Positions 29,175-46,480 of a DNA stretch of 64,000 nt are shown here, piece by piece (position 1 is the first letter of the stretch; each line of letters starts with the position of its first letter). The DNA is from Vitrella brassicaformis CCMP3155 (Eukaryota; Protista; Chromerida). Location of the stretch: positions 62,001-126,000 of the forward strand of contig CDMY01000243.1 of assembly GCA_001179505.1 (NCBI GenBank), in the 5' to 3' direction. Made by a program: the position numbers and the translations under genes. The notes under the pieces are model-generated. The model saw only the letters and a program-made list of their open reading frames with translations. It was not told the DNA's origin and did no database searches.

Positions 29175-30760
29175 TCACCAGTTGCTGTAGGACGTCTGCC
29201 CACCAGCCACCTGTTGGGTGTAGCCGTACCCGCTGGCGTCCCCCGCTCCCCTATAGCTGTTCCTCCGGCCGCGCCTGAAGTAGGCTGAAGCTGGCTGGTA
29301 GCGCTGCGCCTGGCTGTAGTAGCTGCCGCCGTACCCATACCCGCCCCCATAGGAACCGCCATACGAACCGCCATAGCCTGCACTCATCCATCCATCCATC
29401 GATACACACACATCCATGCATATACACCGTCCCTCTCGCCCAGCTGGCTGGCTGGCTGGCTGGCTGGGTGGGTGGCTGGGTGGGATGACACACATTACTC
29501 ACTGCTTGCACGGCGGCCCGCAGCGCGACGGTTGCTGCGGTTGACGTAGGTCTGCTTGCCCGCACCGTAGTACCCGCCCTGCTGCTGCTGCTGCTGCCCA
29601 TACTGCTGCTGCTGCTGGCCACCGCCGTAGTACTGCTTCGCGACGGACGACCCAGAGGGCAGCGGCACACGGCTGCCAAACGCCTGTGGGAGCGGGTTGG
29701 GAGCACGGCCGAGATTGGCCTTGATCTGGAAACCCTTGCCGCGCCCGCCCGCCTGGCCCTTGCGCGCCACCACCGCACGGTTGCCGCGGGCGGCCGCCTT
29801 GGGCCTGGCGGCCTGCTGCTGCTTCTTGCCAGCCGACACGCCCTGGCGACGGAGGGAGGTGTTGAAACGACCAACCTGCGTACACACACATACACACGAC
29901 CACGCACAACAGACATAAGGAATCGGTTCATAAATGCAGGCCCCATCCTGTCCTTTCTCGACTTGCCTGACGCTTCTGGATGCCCCCCTGTCGACTAACA
30001 CGCACGCCAGCGGTCCTCTTGACGCGCGACTTGGCCTGTGCCTTGGCCGCCCCTCCCGCCGCCGCCTTGGCCGCCGCTCCCTTGCCGCCCCCCGCCTTCT
30101 TGGCCTTGACCATACGCTGCAGCCGAGTGGTCTTCTTGCCTGCGCCCGCCTTGGCCGACTGCTGCTGCTGCTGCTGCTGCTGTTGTTTGCGGCTGCCTGC
30201 ATGGACACCACCAGAGAGGGAAAGGAGAGCCGGTTGAGCAGGCGTGCCAGTCAGAGATGATGTGGCATGGCATGGCATTATGGATCATCATTAGGGCGGG
30301 TGAAGGGAGAGGGAGGGGGGAAGTGGATGAACGGATGGTGGCTGACCGAGTCTCGCTCGGACGCCTCAATCATCGCTCGCTCCGCTACCACACCTCCGTG
30401 CCTCCCTCCCTCCCTCTCCTTTCTCACTCGTCCATCCGTATCTCCTCGCTTCACCCACGTCGCAGTGATGTCGTATGCGTACCGCCGCTGCGTGTCTTCT
30501 TGGGGTTCTCGCGACGCACACCACTTCCGGAACCACCCTTGGCACTCGACTTGCGGGCAGCCGATTTGCCCTTGGCCTTGGCCTTGGTCTTGGTCTTGGC
30601 CTTAGCTTTGCCGCCCTTCCGCTCGCTCTTGATGAGGTCGTCGAGGGAAAGCTCGAGCTTTTTCTCCACCTGGGCAGAGAGAACACAACACACAGCACAA
30701 GACACGTCAGAACTGACAAGGCGGCCAGCGGCATGTGTCGTCTCTCACGTTCATCTTCAT
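29175..30760 (-). CDS. Low-complexity K/R/G/Q/Y-rich protein with an N-terminal UAP56-binding motif (ALYREF/UIF/CHTOP-like); no RRM seen
   Basis: Spliced MKMN|VEKKLELSLDDLIK matches the KLDMSLDDII motif; the rest is basic, poly-Q and GY-rich; about 5 exons with compatible phases. Confidence 0.65.
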
Positions 30761-31329
30761 CTTGGGCTACGTAGCTGGCGCTTCTAGCAACAGGCTCGGC
30801 AACAGAAAGGCTCCTTCAAGCTGGAAGGCCCTCGCACCACAACAGAGGAGAGCGGAGTGCTGTTTCTGTCTCGCACTCTCCGACGGCTACCCAAGCGTCG
30901 AACGCTGTACTAATCTCAGCGCCCTCAGGCCCTGATGCGATGTCCAGAGCCTAGAAACGCCGGTTGTTAGGATTTCCGTGAAACGGTTTGTGGTGGGGGC
31001 TTTGAGACGTCAAGACGCAACCACACGCCAAGCATGACGCGGACACGCCGCAGTGTATACCATCGAACAAATGGACATTGGAAGGAGTTCAGCAATTGAT
31101 TGGGTTGACGTCCATTGGTTGACGTTCGACTGATGTCCGGCGATTCGGTCCTTTCAAGGCCATCAAACGCGGCCAACACGCACGAAGGCAGCATTTGAGC
31201 ACAGCGAAGGCCGCCTGTGTGATCTCCTTGCTGCGCTACCGCTCCGTGTGCCCCACCGTGACCCTGCTGACCTCCCCCCTGTACTCAGCTTTCCTGCCAG
31301 ATCAGCTGATCAAGATCCGAGAAATCGTT

Positions 31330-34300
31330 ATGAAGAGGCTTGCTGAGGCGCTGCTTCTGCTCTGGGTGTGCCTGCTGCACTGCCGGCCAGCTTGCGGCCA
31401 ATCGCCGACTTACATCTTTCGACGGCGGAGGGATCCCTCCAACCTCCCCGCCGCCTTGTCGTTCAGGCAAGCTTCATCCCCCCCTCTCCAGGCCGCCAAC
31501 AACGTGACAGTGGGCATTCTGATCAACCTCAGCGGCAACCAGGACAAGTGCGGCCTGCAGCGGTTTCTCGCCGTCCTCGCGGCCATCCTGCACGGCCACC
31601 ACCGCCACGCCACCTACTGCCCGTCCATCAAGCAGCTGTCTTCTTCAGCCTCTCTGGTGCCCCACGTCAATTGGGAGGCGAGGGACACAGAGGGCCGCCC
31701 ATCTGTGTCTGGGATAGAGTCGTACAGGTGGATGGAGGACCGCAGCAAGTGGCAGGGGAGGCTCGTGGGAGTGCTGGGGCCCACCACCAGCGGGTCTAGC
31801 CGGGTGGTGGGGCAGGTGCTGGAGATTGAGGGGATACCGCACCTGCCCTGGGTGGCATCCGACACCGATGTCGCTGACAAGAAAATATACCCGTTCACAT
31901 TCCGAACGGTCAGCTTGCAGCCACAGCCACACACAGAAACACACAATCATCCATTGCTCATATTCTTGTGTGTATGGCACGTCAGGTAGCGTCGAATGCC
32001 CTGATCGCCCAGGCCGCTGCATCTTTGATCGGCTCCTTTGGCTGGTCTGAGTTCATTGCTGTGAGCACACCGGCCGACTCGACGTCCCAGGACATCTTCA
32101 GCGACCTTAACTTCCAAGTGACTGGTGTGGTCGGGCCAAGCCTGCCATCGGGCGACGACGGCAGCAAAGTGAAGGTGCGACACATCGAGCTAGAGCTTGA
32201 GGGACAGATTGCGCCTGGGGGGGAGAACAATGACGCAGCAACGCTTTCCGCCATCCGGAGGACCGTGGGGAAGATTCGTGCTTCCCCTGAGCGAGTCGTC
32301 GTCCTGTGTGTGATGTCATCGATCGCCATCAAGGTCAGCGACGCAGCGAAGGGCGTGTGTGTTGCCCCATACCCATGTTTGCATGTGTTGCCTTCTGTGC
32401 CTGTGGCAGATTATCCGTGAGGCGGATGAGCAGGGCATCGGCGGCCAGGGGTGGGTGTGGATCGTCACAGACGACATCACTGTGCCGACCAACAAAACAG
32501 CCAATGCCACCATCACCTCCCCTCCACCCACCACCAGCCCCCCGCCCCTCATGCACCTCTCTTCTACCGCCGCTCCACAGCCCAAGATCGACGCCTCAGA
32601 GACCACCCAGCTGCTCGAAGGTATCTTCGCTGTTCGAGCCTACAAGGGAGGGGAGGAGTATCGTTACTTTGTCGACAAGTGGCCCTTCATCGTCCGCGAC
32701 GTGGTGGCCCAGTTCTTCCCCAACTTGTCTCTTCCGCTCCCCGGCCCGACGCCCGCCCCTGTGTTGGACCTCACTGTCGATGTGGCTGACGTGGTTGCCG
32801 AGGTGGAGTCTCTGGTGGCCGACGCCCTCAAGAACTCCCCAGACCGGCTCCTTCAGGCGGATCAGTGTGCCACAATCAGCGCCTCCTACGACGCCGTGAT
32901 CACCTTTCTGTTGGCGATGGAGAAGGCCTTGGCCAACGGCGGAGATTCGCAAGACCTGACGGGCCCCCTCATCGCCACTCAGCTGCGCAGACTCGCTCCA
33001 TTCCCCTGTCTGTCGGGCACAGTGGCCTTCGACGAGAGCCAAGACCGCCAGGCCATGATCGAGATCGTCAACTTCGATGGCAAGGATGCCGTGGGCCACC
33101 CTGTGGCCGTATGGGAGCAGCAAACCGGCCTCGAGTGGCGCGATCGAGACGCCGACTCGGCCTCCAGTGCATCTGTCCCGAGCGTGGTCTGGCGCGGGGG
33201 CATCGTAGGCCGCAATCACGCCCACAGGCCGCTTGGATACCCCCTGTGCCGGCTCGGCGAGAGCTTCAACCTTCCATCGCTGGAGTGCGTCAAGTGTCCA
33301 GTGGGGCGGTATGCGCCGAAGCTGGAGGGCGGGAAGGTGGTGGATGAGGACGGGACTGAATGGGTGCGGGCGCCTCTGAAATGCGAGCTCTGTGACGATG
33401 GGCTGTATTCGGACCAGGAGGGGACGGCACAGTGCACATCGTGCGCCACAGGACACTTCAGAAACAAGTCAGCGGATACGTGTACGGCGGCACAGCGGAC
33501 GAGTGCACCATGTGTGTGGTTGTCTTTGTCGCAGTTCCTACGAGGAGGCGGAGGGGATTCCAGAGGAGGAGTGGGGTGTACGGTGCCATCCCTGTCAGAA
33601 GGGCACGATGGCAAGGAACCAAGGCACCGCAGCATGTGAAAAGTGCCGGTACGTACGCCACGAGACTGCACGGAATTACTGTCGATTATGCACCTTGCTC
33701 ACTGCCTGTCCTGTTCTCGTTCCCTCTTCTCAGCGCCGACACGTACCAGGATTTGCGGGGCGCGGCAAGATGCAAGAGATGCCCAGAGTTCTCATCCACA
33801 CGCACCATCGAGGGTCAGCTTGCAATCCCCTTACTCAGTTTTCCTGCATGCGTGTCTGCGTGTGAATCTGCCACGAACAGGTGTGACAAACATCACAGAG
33901 TGTGGCTGCCACCGCGAGTACTACTTTCACCCCGAGCAGACGCCCGAGACCAGCATGTGTGCCGACTGCCCAGTGGGCGGCGTGTGCATAGGGGACTTCA
34001 ACAACACGAGCGACGAGGGTCTGGCGGTGCCGCTCGGCACACACAACATGCCGTTCGCTCACAAGGGGTAAGCAAGTGCACTCGAGGCTTTGTGGGTGGG
34101 TGGGTTGATCTGCATCCATGCAAGCTTGCTTGGTCGGGTGGGTGCTGTGTGTATGTATGCAGGCACTATTTGGTCAAGGAACCTGGCGAGAAAGTCGGTG
34201 AGATCATTCCCTGCTTCTCGCCCTTCTTCTGCCTGCAGAACAACACATGCCTCAGAGGGTGGGCGCGTGGGTGCCACACCACAGAACTCACACACACGAC

Positions 34301-37300
34301 GGAGGCTTGTTCTCACAGAGCCTGTCTGTCTGTGCTGCTCTTGTCTCTGCAGCCATGAAGGGCTTCTGTGTGATCTGTGCAAACAGGGCTGGACCGCGGG
34401 CGATTACGAGTCGTTGCGTCAGTGCCGCAGGTGCGCCGGCCCGGCCCAGAATGTCCTTGGGCTGTTCTTCATTGCCGTCATCTTCTTGGTGTTCGGATTC
34501 TTCCTCGCGACGCTGTCGCTTGAGTCTGGCGTCAGACCCAAGTGAGACACACATACACACATACACACACACATATGTATGCACAGACACATGAACACGA
34601 ATGGCTTTTCTCTGCATCTCGATTTGCCAGGGCGATGCATTCAGTAATGCTGCGTATCTTCCTGAACTACCTGAGCTGTATCTCGGTGCTGTCCCGCTTC
34701 CGCATGGTCATCAAAAACAACCTGGCCTTCCCCTCTGTGGAGGAGGAGAAGGCATTCGAGGCCCCAAGGGACCAAGGCGGCTTTCGCATAGACCGAGGCA
34801 TCAACTGGCTGGGCGACCTCTTCGAGATGTTCTCGTGGTCAGGTGGCATTCCGACGCAATCGTTCTCGATCGAGTGCTTGTTGCGGGGATGGGTGGAGGG
34901 AGAGCCACACTCGATGAGCATGACACACCCTCAGGTACAAAGACAGAGAGAGGGCAGAGTGTTGTGTGAGTGCATGGTCTGTATCTTGTGTGTCTTGTGT
35001 TTCAGACTGTGATATTCAACTTTCTGGTGTGGTTTGCGATGCCCGTGTTGCTGCCGCTGACCATGACAATGGTGGGCGGGCTGGTGCTGTGGAGGTGGGA
35101 GAGGCGCAATCAGGCATTCATCGAGGAGTACTCGTCCTGGCTCATACAGACAGTACGCCTCACACATCAACGGAAACAATGCAATACATGTATGTATGTG
35201 TTGCTGATATGATGTCTATGCTTCCATGTCAGGACCGCTACGAGCCCGTGCACTTTTACCGTTTCGGCGGCATCTGGCGGACGCCCGGTCCCCAATACGA
35301 GATGATGATGGGCATCAAGCTAACCAGGTGGCGCCGCTTCCGCATGTTCCTGCAGGACTGCATCCCTCTGTGCATCATCGCGGGCTTCCTCATCCACCCC
35401 GACGTGTCCAAAAACCTCCTGCAGCTTCTCCAGTGCCGCAAGATACACGAGACCTACAGGTCAGAGACGAGGCAGGCGGATGAAGGGGTGGGTGGACACA
35501 TGTGCGATTCTTGCTTTGCTCGTCAGGCTGTTCGCCTCTCTCGAAATGGTGTGCTTGGAGGGCTGGCACAGGGGATGGGCCATCATGGCAGCACTCGGCA
35601 TATGCATCTGGGGTATACACACACACACACACACACTTGACGACAGGCACACACAAATGTATGTCACTCTCTTGTCTTGTCGTGCCGTGCGTGCAGGTCT
35701 TGGTATTCCCATTTTTGCGTTGGTGTTGCTGTGGCGCAACAAGAAGAACCTGCAGGACAGCAAAGTGAAGCAGAAGTACGGCTTCCTGTACAATGGGTAC
35801 GAGCCGCAGTTCTACTTCTGGGAGGCAGTCATCCTCGTCCGCAAGCTGGGGGTGCAGCTGGTCATGTTCCTCTCGCTCGGCAACCCGCAGCTGGAGCTCA
35901 CCGGCTACATCTGCATCGCCGCTCTCGCAATCATCGCACACATCTCATGCAAACCTTTCGGTCAGTCAGTCAATCAATCATTTACTCACTCACAAAACAC
36001 ACAGACATTCACAGAGTGAGAGAGAGAGAGAGAGAGAGAGACAAGCAAGACACTAGCAAGCGTGTTGTCCGTTCGTGTGTGTTGTGTGTGTTGATCAATC
36101 AGACAACCGCGACAGGGAGGTGCTTGATCGGATGGAGATGGAGGGCTTGGGTGTGTGGATGTTCAGCCTGATCGCCATGCGGCTCATCATCGACAACGTC
36201 ATCATGTGGTTCACCGTCTCGCTCATCCTGCTCATTTGCCTCCTCAACGCCATATTTGTGGTGCGCACCGCACGCAGAGTCTTCAGGCAGATCAGGCGAT
36301 CCGTTGTCGAGCAGTCATACGTCCACGAGGTGGGGAAGCGAACAGGACCGAACTCCTATACACAAATAGACACGAGACCGTTGCCCGTGTTTATTCGCGT
36401 GTGTGTGCTTCTTCATTCAGGAGGAGCGTCGTTTGCTGGGTCTCACCCAGAACATCGGGTGTTGCGGCCGCTTCATCCAGGCCATCGTCACCAGCATGCG
36501 CGAGGCAGACAAGCGATGGCGCGACAGACAAGCCACGCTCATCTACGACCCGAAGGGCAACGCACTCGTCCTCACTAAGCCCACCGACCTCTCTCTCTCC
36601 ACAGGCAGCAGCCCCAGGAAGCGCAGGCGAAGCAACAAACACAAGGCCTCTGCCTCGCAGCCGCCCACTCCGCGAGAGGCTTTAAAGCGGCTCTCGACGA
36701 CCGACAGGCTGGCTGGGGCGACTGATGGCCAAGACGTGGCGAGGGCGCAAGGGCGCAAGTTGGCTGTGATGAGTGAGCCGACCACCCCGATGAGGTCCAC
36801 GGGGGATGAGTGGGGCTCGCCGAGGAACAACCACATCGATGAGATTGGGTTCGCGTCGGACACCTCCCCGACGGGTGCCGCTCGCAAGTGGGGCGGCAAG
36901 AGCCGGAGGAGCTTGCGGCGAGGAAGCACGCTCAGACAGAGAGACCGACAGTGAGCGGGCGGGTGGATGAAGCAACGAATCGAGGGATCTGCAAATTTCT
37001 CCTTATGTGGGACGCGTGGTGCAGGTATCTGGTGCAAACGCTTTCTGAGGCGCTGAGCTATCCGTTGGTCAGCCTAAAAGTCGACCGTCTGCCACTGGAG
37101 TGGATGGAATTCTGCATACGACAGGTGGGCATGCATCCATTCATTCATTCATTCATCGACACCCGAGTCTCTCGACTTGTGATGGCATCCCTCTGCAGGC
37201 GATTCACGACGTCAACTCTCAGAAGCTCCTCCGCGAGAAGATCAAGCGTCGCGAAGTGGGCCGCAACATCTCTCGCAGACCCGGTGACAGCACCCTTTTG

Positions 37301-39798
37301 GCGGCCACGCGAGCATACGACCCCTCACACCCGGGCCTCTCTGCCCCCGATGCCCCCCTGCCACCCGCTCCGCCCCGCTCGGACCTGGTCACCAAGCAGG
37401 TCCTGGACCGGTTCTTCGGGGGGGCACACGAGAGGCAAGGAGTCGACGGAATGGGCGGGCAGTTGTCGCGGGGCTGCCCGATCACACACAGTGACTCGGA
37501 CCTGTCCAAGAGCCACGAGTCGTCTGGGTCGCCGCTGCTCAACGTGCCGATGTGGCGTGCCAGGCAGACCTCTGAGGTGAGTGAGATGTACAAGACTGCA
37601 TGAAACACACACATATCCATGGTGTATGTGTGTGTCTCAGCCTCCCGCCCCTTCGATGAGCGGCGCCAACGAGTCCAACGAGTCTGACCGGGAGGAGAGG
37701 CCGCCCCGATCGGCCCGCCAATTTCAGTATACGCCCGACCACCACGCCGCCCCCCCATCACTGACCACCCCCACACACTCAGAGCGCGGCGCACCCACCG
37801 ACCCATACGCAGGGGTGACGCCCGCCACCGCCGAGCTCCTCGGGCTACGGCAAGCGGATGGGTCGGGCGTACCCGAGGGCAGACAGGAGGAGTCGGGGAT
37901 GCTGGTCGTGTCTGGGGGGCCGCCGCTGCTCGACATACGGCGGGAGTCTTCGGCGACGCCGTCGGTCAGCATACGGGGGAACGGCCGGTGGGTGAGGAAG
38001 CGGTCCTCGTCGTTTTGCGCCGAAGAGCTGTTCAATGCGTCATTCTTTTCGTAAGCATGTACGGGGGGCTAACCAGCCGCCGGCCATCGATGCAGAGTGT
38101 GTGTGTGTGTGTGTGTGGGTTGCAGGAAGGGTGTGTTGATGACTGACCTGCAGGCGAATATGATGACACTGCAGTCTTTGAGCAAGGTGGACATGAGGGA
38201 CCGCATGACGGCTTTCTTGGTGGCCAAGAAGCAAGAGGAAGTCAATCGCAATCGGGTCAGTGTGGACCGGTCAGCAACCGCTTTGGTGCATCCATGCTTC
38301 TAGTTCTTGTGTGTCCTCTGCCTCTCCTCCACGCATGCAGGAACGCGTCTTAAACAATTTGGAAGACTTCATTGCAGCACAGGGCCTCCAGCCGTCCGCC
38401 TTACAAGTAAGTTGCGCCGCGAGCCAGGCATGCTCATGCCTCTAATGTGCCTCCCTGTCTTCCGCAGGTGTTCGTGCAGGCGCTTGACCTCTACCGCCAT
38501 GCCTTCCGGCTTACGGCCGGCCGCCGCGTTCTCAACGCGAGCGGCTCGACGCTCTCCCACCTGTCCAGCCCGTCCATCGCCTCGCCCCCGCCGCCCATTC
38601 CCGTGCCCATCCCAGTCACCGACCACCACGCCACGGCCCCCTCACACGTCCCCGGCGACCGCAGCTTCATGTCGCTGCAGTCCGCCGACGACGTGGCTGC
38701 TGCCACCCTGGGCATGATGCCCAGCGGGGGCCTTCGGGAGAGTGCCGGCCAGAGCGGCTCCCTGAACCTCACTGAGGCTGCTGAGCCGTGTCAGGAGGAC
38801 AAGCACGAAGAGTCCACCCAGCACAGAGAGGTGGCGACGGACAGGGATGGTGGTGGTGGTGCTGGTGGTGAGGATGGGGGTGGTTCTGGGTCCCTGCTGC
38901 TTGTGCAGCAACAAAAGACGGCATTCTTCGGCCGTCGGCCGTCGTATCTGGCCATCCCGTCGCGTCAGGGGACGGTGGAGGACACAGACAAGGTCAAGGA
39001 GCCCACACCGCAGCCCAGGCCGCCGCGGATGAAATCCATGACGACCTTCGCTGCCGAGGCGCACGACGACTCGGCGGCCCCCTGCAGTCCTAAGAGTGTC
39101 AACGGCGGGTCGGCCACCTCCCCGCCGCTCTCTGACCCCCTCTGCCCCTCCCCAACCCAGAACAAGGACGGTAGCAAGCCCCAACAAGAGCACACTAGCG
39201 ACAAGGGAGATGGCAAGACGGAGGAAGAAGAGGCAGAGGCCGACGAGGCTCCCAAGGCAGCACAGCAACAGCAGGCGGCAGCGACACTGCCGGTCTCACT
39301 CTCGCCCGAGCAACAGCCTTCGGCCGATGACGCAGCCACGACTGGCCTGCCGCCGTCCCCCCTGCCCCCTCCCCGCCTCATGTCGCCCCTCACTGACACG
39401 GAGAGGCCACCGACGTTCGCCCCTGGTGCAGGCATGATTGACCTGAAGGAGCTTTTGCGGAGCAGACAGGCTGCGAGTGGAGGGAGGCAACAACACGCAC
39501 CCCAGCAGCAGAGTTCCCTCCTGGCTGGTTCGCTGACTGCCAAAGGGCAGTCGGCGAGGCTGCGCGGCCGAAGCCTTGAGCGGCGCACTGCGGACAGGCG
39601 CAAGATGGGCAGCCTCGTGAGGGTAAGTAAGCGCACATCAAGACGGCGATCCTATGCAGTCATGGATGCCTCTACGTGTCTCAAATATTTGTGTGGCTGC
39701 CTGCCTGCCTGGCTGTCCTGTGTCATGCATGTCTTCAGGCGTCGGTGAGTCCCGTGGGGGCCAGGGATAGCCAGGGCATCATGTCAGGAGTGCTGTGA
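31330..39798 (+). CDS. Large receptor-like membrane protein: signal peptide, Venus-flytrap (ANF_receptor/PBP type 1) domain, GCC2/GCC3-type Cys-rich repeats, about 9 TM (CRMP-type), long cytoplasmic tail; about 22 exons, about 2,200 aa
   Basis: Leader MKRLAEALLLLWVCLLHCRPACG. VFT: VGVLGPTTSGSS, IPHL..VASDTDVADKKIYPFTFRTV, FGWSEF, GWVWIVTD, ASYDAV, LSGTVAFDESQDR. Cys repeats: CVKCPVGRY, CTSCATG, CKRCPEFSST, CADCPVGGVC, HEGLLCDLCKQG. TM: KYGFLYNGYEPQFYFWEAVILVRKL, HISCKPF. Confidence 0.85.
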
Positions 39799-40139
39799 GT
39801 ATAGTGAGTGCATGGGAGGGTATGTACATATGACTGACTGATGTTGGCCATGGCCCACTGCCTGCGTGCCGGCCGTGCCGGCCGGCCGGCCGCAGGCTGA
39901 CCAGAACAGATGTAGAATTGTACACGGAAATGGCAGTTTTGTAGTGCACAGATGCGTGGATATGCTTGTTGGTCTGGTGAGCTTCGTCACCATTCATTCT
40001 GCTAAATTAAGGACCGTGGTTCTCGCTTCTTAAGCGCGTTTCACTCGACCGTTGTTTCTCTATCGGACCGTTGTTCAAGCACATGGGGATGAAAGAGGAT
40101 GCGACAATGCAATCCCCCCGACGAGCGGGCAAAATGGAA

Positions 40140-40181
40140 AGGCCAAACAAATGAACAGACAGGCCAAACAAATGAACAGAC
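40140..40181. repeat. Perfect 21-bp tandem duplication (aggccaaacaaatgaacagac x2), intergenic
   Basis: Two adjacent identical copies at 40140-40160 and 40161-40181. Confidence 0.9.
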
Positions 40182-40809
40182 ACGTCAAACAAGTGCAGGC
40201 AAAGAAATGTAGATTGTACTGTTTAGCTAGACAGAAAAAAAAAATACAATACAACAATGTACAAGCATGCGCATGGCTCCACTTGTCAATCATGCACGTA
40301 AAGGCGGTCGTGCAAACACTTCTTTCCTGCGTCCACCCACATGCATATAGCTACATAAGCTCACCGGTCGTCCCAATTGGGTCCTTCCTGTCAAATAATC
40401 GCGTGCTCTCTCTATCCGTCGGCACTCGGTCAGCCGTGCCTGCCAAGAGCAGCCAAAAGCAGTATCCATATAGCGGTGACCCTACATTCTAAGAGGCTCC
40501 TAAACGCGCTGAGGGCCCTCACGACATCCAATATAGCACAGCACAATACTGCGTGCATACGGACATACAGTACTGTACTCAGTGGGTGCTCTGCTCCTGC
40601 TTCTGCAGGACGAAAAATACGAAAAATAAGAACAGCAAGCACTCACTCATTCATTCACTCACTCGCTCACTCCCATCTATATCGTCTAGCACGCGGCATG
40701 TATGCCCTCTGTTATATTGTTGTCCCTTTGGACGAACAATCCAACAGACATACACACACAGAGACAGAGACAGAGATAGATAGAGAGAACCAAAAACCCC
40801 GCGACGACT

Positions 40810-41895
40810 TCAAGGCAAGCAGTCGATCCAGAGGAAGCAGTCGCAGCCGCGGATGAGAAAGCCAAAGAAAGGGTCCCTTATCGCGGTGCAGATAGAATTG
40901 TCGATGACGCGGATTGTTAGCAGACAGTCGTCCATCGTTTGGCCATAGTCGACAGCGACTGTTCCGACACAATTGACCGCGGCGCCGGTTGCGTCGGTGC
41001 AGGCACCGGCGCCTGCCAGATTCTCACAGAAGAACTGTCAAGGACGCAAAAAGTGGATGATGGTCACATGAGTGACGGTTCGCTTTCTCACGTTCGCAGC
41101 TTCGAAACCGCAATCGTATCCGACTCCTAAAAGCGCCTGGCCGCACCAATACATTCATTCAAAGCATTCAGAGGGACATACAGCAAGTGTGTCTGTGAAT
41201 GCTCGACCCTGGCCACACTTGTCCACAGAAATCGCAGGGACTCCGGCTGTTGGGTTGTTAATCCGCGTTTCTGCACATGCATCCAACCGCTTTGGGTGAT
41301 CAATGAGCGCAACGAATGGCCACACAATCAGAGTCCCACTTACGCTCGGCCGCCGCGAGGCACTCCGCGTCTTCGTCGTCGCAGCCAAAAACCACTCGCT
41401 CAGCGCTTGCAACTGCGGTGCATACACAGGCCAGAGAATGACGTCACCGCGTCCACCTCCCCAGCTTACTGTATTTGGTGCCGTTCGTTTCGTTCGTCTG
41501 CACCAGCACAGGAGAGATAAAACGGACGGCTGCATACAATACATGCACAGAAAGAAGGGAGGGTAGGGAGAGGGAGGTCGTGGATTGCCGCCATTGAGCC
41601 TACTACTGTGCTCACTCACCTCCTCGCGCCAGCGGCTGGCAATACGGGTCCGTCTCGGCACATGACTCATCTTATTTATCCACTGCATCGATTGGCATGG
41701 CCATGGCAGCGCAGACACACACATGGTGCTTGTACGCTTACGGTCTGGCACTATTGCGTCCACGACATCATCGAGGAACTTCAAGTCCGCAGCATCACGG
41801 TCGAACTGCTCGTCAGCGGGTTTATCGGGTGAAACGTCTGCCGCGGCACTGATCAGCAGCGAAGCGCACAACAAGGCGACCTTGGGGAATGCCAT
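40810..41895 (-). CDS. Small secreted cysteine-rich protein, about 7 short exons; middle exons uncertain
   Basis: Signal peptide MAFPKVALLCASLLISAAA; repeated GT(A/G)AG donors and YAG acceptors; the last two exons read ALLGVGYDCGFEAAN|FFCENL..GCDCFLWIDCLP*. Confidence 0.55.
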
Positions 41896-42164
41896 CTCGA
41901 AGAATTGAAGGGAAGTTCGTACAGGGGCTCGAAGAATTGAGGGAAGTCAGGACAGATTGGGACTAACGACGCATGCATGCGGCCGTTGGCATACCCGACC
42001 GCACAGCTGATCGGCTGAGGCTGGAAGGCGCTGCCCTCTACCTTCCCTTCGCACGGCCTTCCACACTTGTCACTCTTCTCACCTAGAAGGCACGATACGA
42101 ACCTGATGGGCATTGCAGTCACTGGGCAATTGCATCCACTCCCGGACTCCGATCGAATGAGTGG

Positions 42165-44627
42165 ATGCAATTGCCCAGCTCATTGCAAAGCGACGATTGC
42201 ACCACGGTCTTCCTCTGCGGCGTCAAGGGGAAAAGAAGCATCGGTGAGACGGGAGACTGGCCCACAGCCCCCAGGGCGAGCTCAAATGCTCGGGCAAAGC
42301 CGCATTTTCTCTGTCTTCTTGTTCCACGTCAGCATCGTGGCACCAGCCGGAGTGCCTCCGGCACAGCGCCGACGTCGCCAACGGCAGAATGCGTTGGTAC
42401 CTGCCCGAGATGACCGGCCTAGTGCCCGCCGGGTGCTTCCGGCACAGCGCCGACGTCGTCAACGGCATGCTGGTCGTGTTTGGCGGCTTCGACGGCCGCG
42501 AGAGCATCAGCGAGGTGTGCGTGCTGGACCTGACCGAGATGCGCTGGTTCCGGCCCAGGGTGGACATGAACGGCATCTCGTGGCGCAGCCACTTCATGCA
42601 CACATCCAACGTCATAGGCGACCGCATCTTCGCCATCCGCACCCTCGTGCAGGGCGACACCAGCTGCGTACTGATCCTCGATACGGCCTGCTGGCGGTGG
42701 TACGAGGTCATTGACGACACGTGGCCGTCGCGGCTGCGGCTGTCGTACACGTCGTCGGTGGTGGATGAGCACATCTACGTGTATGGCGGCATGAGTGAGG
42801 ACTGCACGGTCTTCAGCGATGTGGACGTCTTCGATACGCACCTGTGCAAGTGGACCACCCGGCCTGTCAGAGGGCCCAGCCCGCCACCGCGGCACTCCCA
42901 CACGGTGAAGTGGGGGGGAGGGCAGGGGAGGGGACCGAATGAATGAGTAGAATCACACATGCATACAGACAAGCGACTTGCACGTCTGTTGGTTGTATGT
43001 ATTGTCCATCCGAACCGTCCAGGCGACGGTTGTGGATCATCGCATCTACATCATGGGAGGGACGTGCGACCCCGACACGGTGGTTCCCCGCAGCTACCCC
43101 GACGTGTGGTACCTGGACATCCCCACACTCACCTGGCACCAACTCACATGCACTGGTGCGGTCAGATGATGGCAGGATGGCAGGGAGGGAGGCAGGGTGG
43201 TGCAGATGGTCTGACTCCGTCTGTTAGGATCGCCGCCCTCGAACCTGGTGTTTCACAACGCTGTCTGTTTCGATGACAATCAGCTGGCAGTGCTGTGGGG
43301 CCGCACCGGACAGAAGCACAGTAAGCACCCTCCCTACCTTTCACACACACAGACCATATCAGTGGGCACACACGAACATGCCCCTCTCGCGGCCCCTGCC
43401 CCGTGTGTGTCAGTGCGTCTGCATCTGCTCAACGTCCGTTCTGGCGAGTGGATTGAGGTCAAGGTTGACGGCGACAAGCCGTTGCGCCGCATCGGGTGCA
43501 GCTGCACGGTCATCGGGCGGCAGCTGCTGCTGTACGGCGGCTTCACCGAGTTCAGGGGGCGGCAGGCCGTGTGCACGGACCTGCGTGTGCTGGACCTGAC
43601 AGATGATGGGCAAGGCATCCCGTGGATCAGGAACCCTGAGGTCCTGCAGACCGCTCTAGGTCAGTTGGGTAGGTGGCACGGGGGAAGCGACAAATGCATG
43701 TATGTGTCCGTCCATCCATCCATGCAGGTGAGGTTGAAGCAAAGGAGCCTCTCGCTCTCAACGGCAGCGTTCCACCCGTCCCCTCAGCCCCCGACACCCC
43801 CACTCTCCTGCCCCCCTGCCTCACCGACCCCCTCCCGCGTCTCGAGCGCATCTTCCGCGAACTGCAGGACGACGACCTGGGCGCTGCCCTCTTCAATCTC
43901 ACCTGCGGCACACACGGGGCGGCGTCAACACGGTACCGCGATTCCGGCATCAACACGCCAGAGCAGGAGAAGCAGCCGCGCGCACCCCATCTGACAGTGG
44001 CGGCATCTCTGTCGCTGCCGCGGTTGGCGAGTGAGAGTAATGAGGATGGCGAGAGCAGCCAGCCGTCGGCCCAGGGAACGGATTCCAGGCCGCGGGCAGA
44101 CAGTGGGTCGTGTCCCTCGTCGAGCTCGCTGGACGGCCCACAGTCGCTAGAGCCGCCTGTGGCTGCTCCTGCCCCATCCGCCCCATCACTCGTGCCACCA
44201 TCTGCATCATCTGCGATATCGCAGCCCCTGGACCAGTCGCAGCAGCAGCAGCAGCCACGTCGGTCAATGGGGAGTCCTGGCGGTGGTGGTGGTTTATTTG
44301 GTCCGCTGCCGGCAGGTGTGCCTGAGGACTGGTTGGAGGGATGGGACAACGACGATGAGGAGGAACACCTGACCTTCGAGCAGGCACTGCAGGAAGAGCT
44401 GAGGCTGCAGGTACGTAGGTGGGGATGGATGTGGGCAGCGAGGGAGGGAGGGAGGGAGGGACGACAGAGACGGGTAAGTATGTGTGTGTGGATGTTTTGT
44501 TGTGCAATGTGTGGTTGGTTGAATGGTGTCTGTCATGTGATAGGAGGAGGATCGTCGGCGTCAGGAGAAGAAGGCGGCCAAGCGGCAGAAGCAGAAGAAA
44601 CGCAAACAGCAAAAGGACCAGCAGTAG
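42165..44627 (+). CDS. Kelch-repeat protein with low-complexity linker and basic coiled-coil tail
   Basis: FRHSADVVNGMLVVFGGFDG..DLTEMRW; YTSSVVDEHIYVYGG; PRHSHT; HRIYIMGG; LLLYGGF; tail EQALQEELRLQ|EEDRRRQEKKAAKRQKQKKRKQ. Confidence 0.88.
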
Positions 44628-44945
44628 ACGGACAGACAGACGATGGATGGATGCTGGAGTTACTAGTTGGTCAGGGAGGAGCAGGAAGGGGGTGTTTTGT
44701 CTGTGTGTTGATAGGCTGCTTGTCTTGTGTGTGGGGCATGGATGGAGGCTGGGCTGCTTGCATGCAATGATGGGTGGAGGCACACACACATGCAGGGTGC
44801 GGTGTGTGGATCAAACAGCTGTGAACCAACTTTGTCTAGCTGAGTGAAAGAGCGCCATCTTTGGTCCACCTATCTATCTTGGAACGAACGCATGTGACGG
44901 CGCGATGTGCAATGAATTCAATCGCGATCGGTGCTGACATCTTGA

Positions 44946-46480
44946 ATGTTTTTGCGGCTTTTCCTCTTTTCTGTCGCTGCTGGTGTGTCCATCCGTGGTG
45001 GTCATCCCCCTGAGCAACGATTTTCAACCAGATCTCTTGCCTTCACGCTCTCCACACAATTCTCCACACACGGGGCTGGGAGATCACAGCGATACACTGT
45101 CAGCAGCAGCAGCAGCAGCAGAATGGCTCCTCAGCAGCTGCAGCTTGACGCCTCTGACATCGACGGCTTAGCAAAACACCTCGTCGACACTTATCTGCCT
45201 GACCTGCAGCAGGTGCGCTGCAGCTACGGAGAATGAGCAGCTCTGTTTGATGGTGCGCCTGCAATGGCTGGTTTCTCTTTGTGTGATTGTATGTCGTGTG
45301 GTGTTGTATGTATGCAATCCACTGCAATGCATCAATGCAGCAGCTTGGTGACCGTCGGGTCCTCGTTGCTCTTGCTGGGGTGGCAGGTCAGTCAGGTCGG
45401 AAACACACACACGACCAACCATGGGTGACATCCCATTTGCTGTGTGTGATGAATCAATCCGCATGCAGGCTCTGGCAAGTCGACGCTGGCCAAGAGGCTA
45501 GAGGAGCGCATCAACGGTCTGCCGTCCCTCCCCTCCCCCATTTGCAAGGCGGTCGGGATGGATGGGTACCATTACACCCGTCAGCAGCTGGACGCTTTTG
45601 AGGATCCTGTCATGGCGCACAAGAGGCGGGGCGCACACTTCACCTTTGACGCTGAGGCATTCGGGTGCGTTGCGGTCATCAGATGCAATCAATATCAATA
45701 TCAATCTGCCTGCAGGGGTCACATGTGCGTGCGGGCTGTGGGGTGTGTGTGTGTGTGTGTGTGTGCTTGTGTGTTTGACAGATCTCTGCTGCAGAGACTG
45801 CGTGAGAGGCCTCCACGACGCACTCTCGCACCCTCGTTTGACCATGCCGTCAAGGTAAGGTAGGCACGTGGGTGTTGTTGGCGACCTTCATTCATTCCCT
45901 GTGTGTGTGTTATTTGATTCGTTAAAACAGGATCCCGTTGAGGATGGTGTGGTGATCGAAGAGCACCATCGACTCGTCATTGTGGAGGTAGGCTGCGTGA
46001 GGGAGAGATGCAAAGAGGGCTGGCTGTGCACCTGTGGATGTGATGTCGTGTAGGGTCTGTATGTGCTGCTCAATCACCCGCCGTGGAGTCAGTCGGTGGT
46101 GCCCCAGTTCGACTGCCGAATCTTCATCAACTGCCCCATGTCAGCCAGCGCATCAAACAAAACAGATGGCTTCATCTGTGTGTGTGTGTGTCTTACGGCC
46201 ACTTGCAGGGATGTGGCTGAAGAGCGTGTGTGGCGAAGACACGTGGAGAGCGGTATCTGCCGCGATGAACAGGACGCGCGCAAGAGGTGCGTGTGTGTGT
46301 TGTGTAGGCCGGCAGTGAGACAGAAGCGAAGCATGCCTGACGGTGTGTGGTGTGGTGTGGTGTGGATGGGTGGGTGGGTGCAGGTGGCGAGAGTCAGATT
46401 ATGTGAACGCAGAGTTCATCCTGGCGCATTTAGACCCTTCACAAGTTGATGTCCTGCTTGAATCAACGTACAGTCAGTGA
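44946..46480 (+). CDS. Yfh7-like P-loop kinase (phosphoribulokinase/uridine kinase superfamily); alternative start at ATG 45123
   Basis: Spliced RVLVALAGVA|GSGKSTLA; MDGYHYTRQQLDAFEDP..AHKRRGAHFTFDAEAF; APSFDHAVK|DPVED; LVIVE; RRHVESGI; ESDYVNAEFI. Confidence 0.88.

What the first reader, a model, noticed from the sequence alone, without database searches (positions are those of the whole stretch)
31330..36330. Class-C-GPCR-like receptor built on an alveolate CRMP-type 9TM module
Seen in sequence: signal peptide, a complete Venus-flytrap domain, several Cys-rich GCC2/GCC3-like repeats, then about 9 hydrophobic helices with YGFLYxGY..FWE.V...RK and a terminal KPF motif. Established: VFT + Cys-rich + TM is the layout of mGluR/CaSR-type class C GPCRs. 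The Cys-repeat + multipass module with this motif is typical of cysteine repeat modular proteins (CRMPs), which control rhoptry discharge in Toxoplasma/Plasmodium and mucocyst release in Tetrahymena. Inference: a small-molecule-sensing CRMP relative that reached a class-C-like layout independently and may couple a nutrient or host cue to exocytosis without a canonical 7TM domain. This is my best candidate for an undescribed system.
Basis: partly seen in the sequence, partly recalled or inferred. Interest (0 to 1): 0.85.

Follow-up and report, generated by a model that had tools for sequence, protein, structure and literature searches.

The report
Flytrap sensor on CRMP membrane core
This is one real, expressed gene of a chromerid-like alga in which a small-molecule-binding "Venus flytrap" head sits on the nine-helix membrane body of the CRMP family, which malaria and Toxoplasma parasites use to trigger invasion, and not on a GPCR body; this pairing was not found in the papers searched.

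Summary
A GT-AG gene starts at ATG 31330 (+). It encodes a signal peptide, a divergent ANF_receptor-type Venus flytrap, ephrin-receptor-like Cys repeats with DUF7631/DUF7630, and nine hydrophobic helices carrying KYGFLYNGY..FWE..RK and KPF.

Spliced contigs of one public run confirm all 14 introns up to 36950. They also show that the gene does not end at 36330. The in-frame TGA at 36952 is spliced out, and the reading frame continues to about 39.8 kb, giving roughly 2,200 aa.

The membrane part is not 7tm_3. Four exons match the published TgCRMPA core in order (E 1e-7 to 1e-17), including a CRMP-type cytosolic motif absent from 189 other family members fetched. The same core belongs to the pan-eukaryotic Pfam TRP (PF06011, yeast Pkd2/Flc-like, nine-helix) superfamily: 31 of 55 relatives match it. 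No solved fold resembles it.

So "CRMP-type, class-C-like layout without a 7TM" is supported. "Alveolate-specific" holds only for the cytosolic motif, and the link to exocytosis is untested. The flytrap keeps only 3 of 7 checked amino-acid-binding positions.

This scan has already reported flytrap-on-CRMP/Pkd2-like genes at about seven other loci of this genome, reported as Vitrella brassicaformis. No paper found describes the combination. I rate it a new variant of a known kind.

The parts
31330..39798 (+). Whole gene: 21 modelled exons, about 2,200 aa. Exons 1-15 (31330-36950) and the start of exon 16 are supported by RNA. Exons 17-21 are ab initio.
   Evidence: Hand-built model; spliced X5 contigs; extension by coding-score dynamic programming, whose score plateaus at 39748-39800.
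31330..31398 (+). Signal-peptide-like N-terminus, MKRLAEALLLLWVCLLHCRPACG.
   Evidence: Sequence and one hydrophobic segment at aa 4-22. By inspection only.
31633..33081 (+). Venus flytrap (ANF_receptor type), spread over exons 1-3 with low-complexity insertions in lobe 2.
   Evidence: Pfam PF01094 pieces in order over profile 12-352 of 353. The nearest solved sequences are mGluR5/mGluR1/T1R flytraps, weakly (E 0.012 and up). 23 of 30 named Atlas clusters are ANF_receptor.
33238..34452 (+). Cys-rich stalk: Ephrin_rec_like (GCC2/GCC3) repeats, then DUF7631-like and DUF7630-like modules (end of exon 3 to exon 8).
   Evidence: Pfam; 25 Cys in aa 560-860; aligns with the stalks of many family members.
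34453..36263 (+). Nine-helix membrane core (exons 8-14), of CRMP conserved-core / PF06011 type.
   Evidence: Hydropathy; BLASTP against TgCRMPA pieces; Pfam TRP at 27.4 bits for exon 13, and 31 of 55 homologous cores at E<=1e-3; AF2 model of the relative P0018 core, pLDDT 83.8.
35774..35845 (+). Family signature KYGFLYNGYEPQFYFWEAVILVRK, placed at the cytosolic face between helices 5 and 6 by my inferred topology.
   Evidence: Sequence. W and E are nearly invariant or invariant in alignment A1. TgCRMPA has KYGFLHNGFVKKYWYWEMVVFARK.
35951..35959 (+). KPF at the cytosolic end of helix 7. It is not the protein's end.
   Evidence: Sequence. TgCRMPA has QPFDKR at the same place.
36951..37024 (+). 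Intron 15. Its donor GT at 36951 removes the in-frame TGA at 36952-36954.
   Evidence: The loose end of the X5 and X6 contigs at 36952 continues with letters found at 37025.
37025..37124 (+). Exon 16: CRMP-type cytosolic motif YLVQTLSEALSYPLVSLKVDRLPLEWMEFCIR.
   Evidence: BLASTP against TgCRMPA YFIKVMSESLGFAVVHMKLDVIPGSFLEFALR, 34.3 bits, E 4e-10. The motif is absent from 189 fetched family members.
37199..39798 (+). Long, low-complexity cytoplasmic tail of about 690 aa (exons 17-21, ab initio).
   Evidence: Coding-score dynamic programming; no Pfam family.

Best explanation
**Shown.** This is a single expressed gene of about 21 exons. The genome is chromerid-like and is reported by earlier notes as Vitrella brassicaformis. 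The gene encodes a multipass surface protein of about 2,200 aa with these parts in order:
- a signal peptide;
- a divergent eukaryotic ANF_receptor-type Venus flytrap;
- a disulphide-rich stalk of ephrin-receptor-like (GCC2/GCC3), DUF7631 and DUF7630 modules;
- a nine-helix membrane core;
- a conserved cytosolic segment;
- a long disordered tail.

The core and the cytosolic segment are homologous to the 'conserved core' of apicomplexan CRMPs. The core also belongs to the wider, pan-eukaryotic PF06011 superfamily, the nine-helix 'TRP-like' proteins typified by yeast Pkd2 and Flc. It is not a class C GPCR.

**Inferred.**
- The N-terminus faces outward and the C-terminus faces the cytosol.
- A small ligand, probably not a canonical alpha-amino acid, closes the flytrap.
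- The rigid stalk, tied by extracellular Cys to the loops of the core, passes this change to the nine-helix body. The body probably works as a dimer.
- The most conserved surfaces of the body (KYGFLY..FWE..RK and KPFD.R) face the cytosol.

**Output.** This is the least certain step. Either the core controls cation/Ca2+ entry, as reported for reconstituted fission-yeast Pkd2, or it acts as a scaffold that licenses regulated exocytosis, as CRMPs do in Toxoplasma and Tetrahymena. The two could be the same pathway.
For: **One transcript.** Spliced X5 contigs confirm the introns. Exon 3 is one open exon that carries both lobe 2 of the flytrap and the first Cys repeats.

**Domains.** Pfam on the exon pieces.

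**CRMP kinship.** Four segments match TgCRMPA in order, at 31.2, 34.7, 57.8 and 34.3 bits. The TgCRMPA sequences were read from Singer 2023, PMC9815656 supplement. The cytosolic motif is shared with Toxoplasma, Plasmodium, Babesia and Theileria CRMPs and is absent from 189 other members fetched.

**PF06011 link.** Exon 13 scores 27.4 bits. 31 of 55 cores match at E<=1e-3, the best at 5e-15, and none matches 7tm_3. S. pombe Pkd2 has nine helices and a disordered tail (10.1101/2022.08.11.503631) and is Ca2+-permeable when reconstituted (PMC9727806, abstract).

**Fold.** The AF2 model of the related Vitrella core has pLDDT 83.8 and pTM 0.80. It has no class C GPCR or TRP-channel match. It matches Atlas clusters with LRR, PMP, ephrin-like, START, TIR or EF-hand additions at TM 0.54-0.72 by the query.

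**Role of CRMPs.** CRMP function in rhoptry and mucocyst discharge: PMC9670195 and PMC9815656.
Against: - Sequence gives no evidence on the ligand, localisation, partners or output.
- The flytrap keeps only S154, S177 and R192 of the amino-acid-binding signature. D is replaced by N, Q by I, and YG by TS. It might bind something else, or nothing.
- Our own exon's PF06011 score is just under Pfam's cut-off (27.4 against 28.5).
- The structure was modelled on a paralogue-level relative (P0018, about 30% identical in the core), not on this protein.
- The tail beyond 37124 is ab initio.
- One juxtamembrane segment that looked similar to TgCRMPA by eye gave no BLASTP alignment.
Confidence: 0.72

Rival explanations
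1. It is a true but divergent class C GPCR: flytrap, Cys-rich domain and a 7tm_3 heptahelical domain that signals through G proteins.
For: The nearest solved flytraps are mGluR and T1R. NCD3G gives weak matches in the Cys repeats, 15.5 and 14.5 bits. PANTHER calls TgCRMPa 'GPCR-like' (PMC9670195).
Against: There is no 7tm_3 match in any exon or in 55 homologous cores. NCD3G is far below its cut-off of 38.9. There are nine helices, not seven. Foldseek and VIA-align find no class C transmembrane domain; the best Foldseek E is 0.16 and the best Z is 8.6, on generic helix bundles.
Confidence: 0.03
2. It is a ligand-gated cation channel. The nine-helix PF06011-type body is itself the pore, as proposed for yeast Pkd2, and the flytrap gates it directly. 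Exocytosis is at most a downstream effect.
For: PF06011 matches across the family. Reconstituted Pkd2 is Ca2+-permeable (PMC9727806). Fungal PF06011 proteins affect Ca2+ homeostasis (PMC8618638 and PMC9600462, listed).
Against: The model shows no similarity to any solved channel pore. The pore of Pkd2/Flc proteins has never been defined. CRMPs have so far been described as sensors or scaffolds, not channels.
Confidence: 0.25
3. The flytrap is a degenerate, non-binding module. The protein would then be one more adhesive or structural member of a large, shuffled family of surface proteins, with no small-molecule sensing.
For: Only 3 of 7 checked signature positions are kept. There are long low-complexity insertions in lobe 2. 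The same core carries many unrelated ectodomains: beta-helix/PMP, EGF, Sushi, LRR and SRCR.
Against: All of the ANF_receptor profile is covered in order. Flytraps that bind ions, sugars or peptides also lack the amino-acid signature. According to this scan's notes, several paralogues in the genome keep a flytrap on this core, which suggests selection for the combination.
Confidence: 0.15
4. It is an annotation artefact: two neighbouring genes (a secreted flytrap protein and a membrane protein), or a pseudogene, read as one.
For: X5 contigs break inside exon 3 (33123 to 33273). The VFT-coding stretch (31538-33123) shows variant contigs in the runs.
Against: Exon 3 (32410-33467) is an uninterrupted open frame joining flytrap lobe 2 to the Cys repeats. 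X5 depth is continuous across it. All 15 junctions are GT-AG and in frame, and there is no stop in about 2,200 codons. Vitrella relatives P0018 and P0151 are annotated with the same order of domains.
Confidence: 0.03

Closest known systems
Apicomplexan cysteine repeat modular proteins (TgCRMPA/B, PfCRMP1-4) and Tetrahymena CRMP1/2
   Same: Both have ephrin-receptor-like Cys repeats directly before a nine-helix core. The motifs appear in the same order: NYL..ISVLS, S[IV][ED]CLLR..IP.., LL.LL.C, GIP, KYGFL.NG[YF]....[YF]WE.....RK and [KQ]PFD.R. Both have the cytosolic Y..SE.L..K[LV]D..P...EF segment and a long cytosolic tail.
   Different: The head is a Venus flytrap rather than Kringle, MAR, EGF, lectin or PbH1 modules. 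The domain list and sequence set of Singer 2023 hold no ANF/flytrap member. The organism appears to be a free-living alga, so host sensing does not apply. Function, partners (MIC15/TSP1-like) and heterodimer formation are unknown.
Pfam TRP family PF06011 (S. pombe Pkd2, Trp663, Trp1322; S. cerevisiae Flc1-3; Aspergillus TrpR)
   Same: Both have a nine-helix membrane domain followed by a largely disordered cytosolic tail and preceded by an extracellular domain. Pfam matches profile positions of about 230-417 in this family.
   Different: The fungal proteins carry an Ig-like lipid-binding head, not a flytrap and Cys stalk. Similarity is distant, and our exon falls just under the cut-off. No channel activity is known for the CRMP branch.
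Class C GPCRs (mGluR, CaSR, T1R, GABA-B)
   Same: The order of parts matches: signal peptide, ANF_receptor flytrap, Cys-rich linker, multipass membrane domain, cytosolic tail. The nearest solved flytrap sequences are mGluR and T1R.
   Different: There is no 7tm_3 and no true NCD3G. The membrane part has nine helices of an unrelated family. This is a convergent layout, not family membership.
Vitrella brassicaformis uncharacterised proteins P0018 (2264 aa) and P0151 (2035 aa)
   Same: Both combine ANF_receptor, Ephrin_rec_like, DUF7630 and the PF06011-type core with a long tail. They are reported to come from the same genome.
   Different: They have an LRR block between the flytrap and the stalk. 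Identity is only about 21-30% in the stalk and core and 24% in part of the flytrap. They lack the CRMP cytosolic motif.
Other flytrap-output fusions: natriuretic-peptide receptor guanylyl cyclases, ionotropic glutamate receptors, Venus kinase receptors, GPI-anchored EhVFT
   Same: A periplasmic-binding-protein-type flytrap is grafted onto an unrelated signalling body (PMC2680970, PMC3703292 and PMC12965686).
   Different: Here the output body is the CRMP/PF06011 nine-helix core. I found no paper describing that pairing.

Membership tests
Class C GPCR | Extracellular Venus flytrap of ANF_receptor type | tested here: met
   PF01094 pieces in order over profile 12-352 of 353; weak mGluR/T1R sequence matches.
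Class C GPCR | NCD3G nine-cysteine linker | tested here: not met
   NCD3G scores only 15.5 and 14.5 bits against a cut-off of 38.9. The same stretches score better as Ephrin_rec_like.
Class C GPCR | 7tm_3 heptahelical domain | tested here: not met
   No 7tm_3 match in any exon piece or in 55 homologous cores. Nine helices. No class C transmembrane domain among the fold matches.
CRMP (conserved core as defined by Singer et al. 2023) | Cys-rich EGF-like/ephrin-receptor-like modules directly upstream of the membrane domain | tested here: met
   Ephrin_rec_like in exons 3 and 4, DUF7631/DUF7630 before helix 1. CRMP domain tables list Ephrin_rec_like.
CRMP (conserved core as defined by Singer et al. 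2023) | Nine-helix core homologous in sequence along its length | tested here: met
   BLASTP of exons 9, 11 and 13 against TgCRMPA pieces: 31.2, 34.7 and 57.8 bits, E 1e-7, 2e-9 and 1e-17, in order. Nine helices.
CRMP (conserved core as defined by Singer et al. 2023) | Cytosolic segment that closes the core (…K[LV]D[VI][IM]P….EF…) | tested here: met
   Exon 16 against TgCRMPA: 34.3 bits, E 4e-10. The motif is seen in Plasmodium, Babesia and Theileria CRMPs and in none of 189 other family members.
CRMP (conserved core as defined by Singer et al. 2023) | Placement inside the CRMPA/CRMPB clades in a tree of cores | not tested
   No CRMP protein could be fetched as a stored sequence. Only short pieces read from the paper were compared.
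CRMP (conserved core as defined by Singer et al. 2023) | Role in regulated exocytosis; A/B heterodimer with MIC15/TSP1-like partners | not testable with these tools
   Needs genetics or biochemistry in the organism.
Pfam TRP (PF06011; Pkd2/Flc-like) | Match to the PF06011 profile at or above the gathering score | tested here: inconclusive
   Exon 13 alone scores 27.4 bits against a cut-off of 28.5 (E 1.9e-6). The full spliced protein could not be submitted. Relatives: P0002 at 28.8 bits; 31 of 55 cores at E<=1e-3, the best at 5.2e-15.
Pfam TRP (PF06011; Pkd2/Flc-like) | Nine transmembrane helices followed by a disordered cytosolic tail | tested here: met
   Pkd2 description in 10.1101/2022.08.11.503631.
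Pfam TRP (PF06011; Pkd2/Flc-like) | Ca2+-permeable channel activity | not testable with these tools
   Reported for reconstituted S. pombe Pkd2 only (PMC9727806).
Canonical six-helix TRP/polycystin channels | S1-S6 fold with a pore loop | tested here: not met
   No TRP or PKD channel among the Foldseek or VIA-align matches to the core model.

The most novel reading that the evidence does not exclude
This would be a CRMP with a definable ligand. A genuine member of the CRMP lineage, sharing its specific cytosolic motif, would have its nine-helix Pkd2/Flc-like body switched by a small molecule bound in a Venus flytrap, producing Ca2+ entry and/or triggered secretion in a free-living relative of Apicomplexa. 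That would mean the parasites' invasion trigger descends from a family of modular chemosensory receptors or receptor-channels. It would also give a tractable way to find out what the CRMP core actually does when activated.
Probability: 0.25. Interest if true: 0.8.

Novelty: new variant of a known kind. Interest (0 to 1): 0.55.

Why it matters
CRMPs are essential for rhoptry discharge and host-cell invasion in Toxoplasma, and they act in mucocyst release in Tetrahymena. What activates them, and what their nine-helix core does once activated, is not known (PMC9670195, PMC9815656).

A natural CRMP-type protein whose head is a Venus flytrap, a module whose ligands can be screened in vitro, offers two things:
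- an evolutionary argument that the family began as modular environmental sensors;
- an experimental handle, because adding a ligand and reading Ca2+, conductance or secretion would test the core's output. Chimeras between this head and a parasite core could be made.

The finding also ties the CRMP core to the yeast Pkd2/Flc (PF06011) nine-helix family, which points to a concrete hypothesis about ion flux. It adds a further output body to the known list of flytrap fusions (GPCR, ion channel, guanylyl cyclase, kinase).

Its weight is reduced because the same design recurs at several loci of this genome already noted by the scan, and because all function is inferred.

Tried and rejected
1. **First model of exon 3's end (33479, donor GTGTAC).** Rejected. 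RNA shows the donor at 33468.
2. **Stop at TGA 36952.** Rejected. It is spliced out.
3. **Unconstrained dynamic-programming extension to 49.8 kb**. It over-ran into junk and into the next gene. I replaced it with a constrained run whose score plateaus at 39.75-39.8 kb.
4. **Looking for the gene's own annotated protein.** Not found. The representative search with exon 13 gave at best 53% identity. The word-based search with P0018 gave 18 hits, none of them apicomplexan.
5. **Fetching CRMP proteins as stored ids.** This failed. The cluster look-ups returned none. I used short pieces read from the paper's supplement instead.
6. **PDB by sequence, using the core profile.** Only the Cys part hits the Chlamydomonas mastigoneme protein Mst1; nothing matches the helices.
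7. **Foldseek and VIA-align against the PDB.** No convincing fold relative.
8. **By-eye similarity of the juxtamembrane stretch RQATLIYDPKGNALVL to TgCRMPA REPIVVFDTENEVIQL.** No BLASTP alignment.
9. **Pfam on the tail.** Nothing.
10. **Other copies in the window.** None.

Full report
**Gene structure**

The region is eukaryotic, with about 58-61% G+C and short GT-AG introns. I built a spliced model by hand from ATG 31330 and checked it against public runs.

Run X5 holds spliced contigs. Twelve joints coincide with my introns. The remaining two, 34542-34630 and 35613-35696, lie in microsatellite stretches that the tool skipped. I confirmed them by arithmetic on the contig's own coordinates: 966 and 957 transcript letters between anchor points, exactly the sum of my exons.

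Two corrections came out of the reads:
- Exon 3 ends at 33467, with a GTCAGC donor.
- The TGA at 36952 is not used. The contigs leave the genome at 36950-36952 and continue with letters that lie at 37025.

A coding-score dynamic programme started at that junction rises until 39748-39800 and then falls. The region 40-42 kb has lower G+C. The modelled protein therefore has about 2,200 residues in 21 exons. Exons 17-21 are ab initio.

Exon 3 is one uninterrupted open exon that carries both the second lobe of the flytrap and the first Cys repeats. The flytrap and the membrane part therefore cannot be separate genes.

**Domains**

Pfam on exon pieces gives:
- ANF_receptor over exons 1-3, covering profile 12-352 of 353 in order;
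- Ephrin_rec_like (GCC2/GCC3) in exons 3 and 4;
- weak DUF7631 and DUF7630 matches just before the first helix;
- for exon 13, the fungal-type 'TRP' family PF06011 (27.4 bits, E 1.9e-6, cut-off 28.5);
- no 7tm_3, and NCD3G far below its threshold.

Hydropathy gives eight clear helices and one amphipathic helix, making nine. With the N-terminus outside, the Cys-bearing loops fall outside. The basic stretches, the KYGFLY..FWE..RK motif and KPFD.R fall inside. This topology is inferred.

The flytrap resembles solved structures only weakly. mGluR5, mGluR1 and T1R come first, at E 0.012 and above. Language-model neighbours are eukaryotic ANF_receptor clusters.

The eight-residue amino-acid-binding signature is quoted in PMC12965686. 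Of the seven positions I checked, only S154, S177 and R192 are kept. D is N, Q is I, and YG is TS.

**Is the membrane part CRMP-type?**

The supplement of Singer et al. 2023 (PMC9815656) holds CRMP core sequences. BLASTP of window exons against short TgCRMPA pieces gave these results, in order along both proteins:

| Window exon | Bits | E-value |
|---|---|---|
| 9 | 31.2 | 1e-7 |
| 11 | 34.7 | 2e-9 |
| 13 | 57.8 | 1e-17 |
| 16 | 34.3 | 4e-10 |

The exon 13 score is as good as those of the best hits in a library of 1.8 billion representatives, which scored 50-67 bits.

Exon 16, the exon reached only by splicing over the TGA, encodes YLVQTLSEALSYPLVSLKVDRLPLEWMEFCIR. This matches the segment that closes Singer's 'conserved core' (YFIKVMSESLGFAVVHMKLDVIPGSFLEFALR in TgCRMPA). 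Similar segments occur in Plasmodium, Babesia and Theileria CRMPs.

That match supports the gene model independently. It is also specific: neither a regular expression nor phmmer finds the motif in any of the 189 family members I had fetched, including the two Vitrella flytrap-LRR proteins.

One further juxtamembrane similarity that I saw by eye was not supported by BLASTP.

**How wide is the family?**

Exon 13 finds 1,877 representatives at E<=1e-3. Named sources include:
- Mantamonas, Thecamonas, Cyanophora and Rhodelphis;
- Gonium, Volvox, Chlamydomonas and Raphidocelis;
- haptophytes;
- Vitrella.

Singer et al. also mention Dictyostelium homologues whose nine helices are predicted to fold alike.

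The ectodomains on this core are highly varied: beta-helix/PMP repeats, EGF, Sushi, SRCR, LRR and IPT/TIG.

Of 55 aligned cores (A1), 31 match PF06011 at E<=1e-3, the best at 5e-15, and none matches 7tm_3. The founding members of PF06011 are the fungal Pkd2, Flc and TrpR proteins. S. pombe Pkd2 is predicted to have nine helices, an extracellular head and a disordered tail, and it is Ca2+-permeable when reconstituted (PMC9727806).

The CRMP core is therefore a branch of a pan-eukaryotic nine-helix superfamily, not an alveolate invention. In my sample, only the cytosolic motif marks out the CRMP lineage.

**Fold**

The spliced protein cannot be handed to the folding tool by reference. I therefore folded the core of the Vitrella relative P0018 with alignment A1. 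The model has mean pLDDT 83.8 and pTM 0.80, with a small beta-rich Cys module followed by long helices.
- Foldseek against the PDB gives nothing better than E 0.16 and TM 0.18.
- VIA-align against 48,161 chains gives Z up to 8.6 on generic helical bundles, aligning about 115 residues. This is below what the tool's notes treat as meaningful for helical proteins.
- No class C transmembrane domain and no TRP or polycystin channel appears in either list.
- The ESM Atlas holds the same fold (TM 0.54-0.72 by the query) in clusters labelled Cnidaria, Chlorophyta, Ciliophora, Haptophyta and Porifera. These clusters carry LRR, ephrin-like or PMP heads and START, TIR or EF-hand additions.

**Same design elsewhere**

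- Vitrella P0018 and P0151 have ANF_receptor, LRR, Ephrin_rec_like, DUF7630 and this core.
- P0152, a metagenomic protein, has Peripla_BP_6, DUF7630 and the core.
- They are only 21-30% identical to our stalk and core, and their flytraps are barely alignable to ours.
- Among the 150 best core hits, only P0018 carries a flytrap.

This scan's notes list flytrap-on-nine-helix genes at about seven other loci of the same genome. Two of those have been followed up (s1-080127 and s1-226936) and reached the CRMP and Flc/Pkd2 readings. They also name the organism as Vitrella brassicaformis. I did not verify the organism independently. The 2015 run dates, the composition and the paralogy are compatible with it.

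**Literature**

No paper in the library holds both 'cysteine repeat modular' and 'flytrap'. The domain list and sequence set of Singer et al. hold no ANF/flytrap member, although three Chromera CRMP-like proteins are included. Flytraps joined to GPCR, channel, cyclase, kinase or GPI-anchor outputs are known.

**Conclusion**

The identity reading (class-C-like layout on a CRMP-type core, no 7TM) is supported and sharpened:
- the core is of PF06011/Pkd2-Flc type;
- this particular gene also carries the CRMP-specific cytosolic motif.

The mechanism is inferred: ligand-induced flytrap closure, passed through a disulphide-rich stalk to a probably dimeric nine-helix body that controls Ca2+ entry and/or licenses exocytosis. 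I rate this a new variant of a known kind. It is of moderate-to-good interest because it could make the unknown output of the CRMP core testable.

Noticed in passing
window 31500-33123: DNA runs (X1, X4) and the cDNA-holding run X5 contain contigs about 96-97% identical to the flytrap-coding stretch. These contigs depart from the window at 31500 and 33071, where loose ends were reported. This points to a close paralogue or second allele of the flytrap part elsewhere in the genome. It is not in this window.
   Followed up: partly
window 36951-37024: The in-frame TGA at 36952-36954 lies immediately inside the donor of intron 15. Retaining this intron would give a 1,479-aa form that lacks the CRMP cytosolic motif and the tail. 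This is a possible regulated short isoform.
   Followed up: no
window 39800-46000: The X5 contig runs 6.7 kb of transcript past 36952, much more than the roughly 2.2 kb of modelled tail. It may read through a low-GC spacer (40-42 kb, G+C 0.525) into the next + strand gene. That gene has Kelch repeats (42389-43991, Pfam) and a P-loop uridine-kinase/PRK-like exon (about 45470-45660; AGSGKST...GMDGYHY, by eye). Whether this is one transcription unit is unresolved.
   Followed up: partly
window 31909-37024 (introns): Five of 15 introns start GTCAGC and seven start GTCAG. Introns are 67-142 nt long. Many have an AC-rich first half and a GT-rich second half (for example 31909-31985: 76% A+C, then 59% G+T). 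Three hold CA or GA microsatellites (34541-34584, 35606-35642, 36005-36053).
   Followed up: partly
alignment A1 / model me31bd29dc643 (P0018:905-1440): Across 55 cores from many eukaryotic supergroups, only P331 (of GIP) and E369 (of WE) are invariant. By my inferred topology the most conserved stretches lie at the cytosolic face. Atlas relatives carry cytosolic START, TIR or EF-hand additions, which hints at diverse outputs bolted onto one chassis.
   Followed up: no
window 29400-31200, both strands: Upstream of the gene there are only low-complexity open frames (Q-, K/A- and R-rich) with no Pfam match for the one I tested (29498-30211, - strand). This is probably a promoter or UTR region, or a low-complexity gene.
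   Followed up: partly
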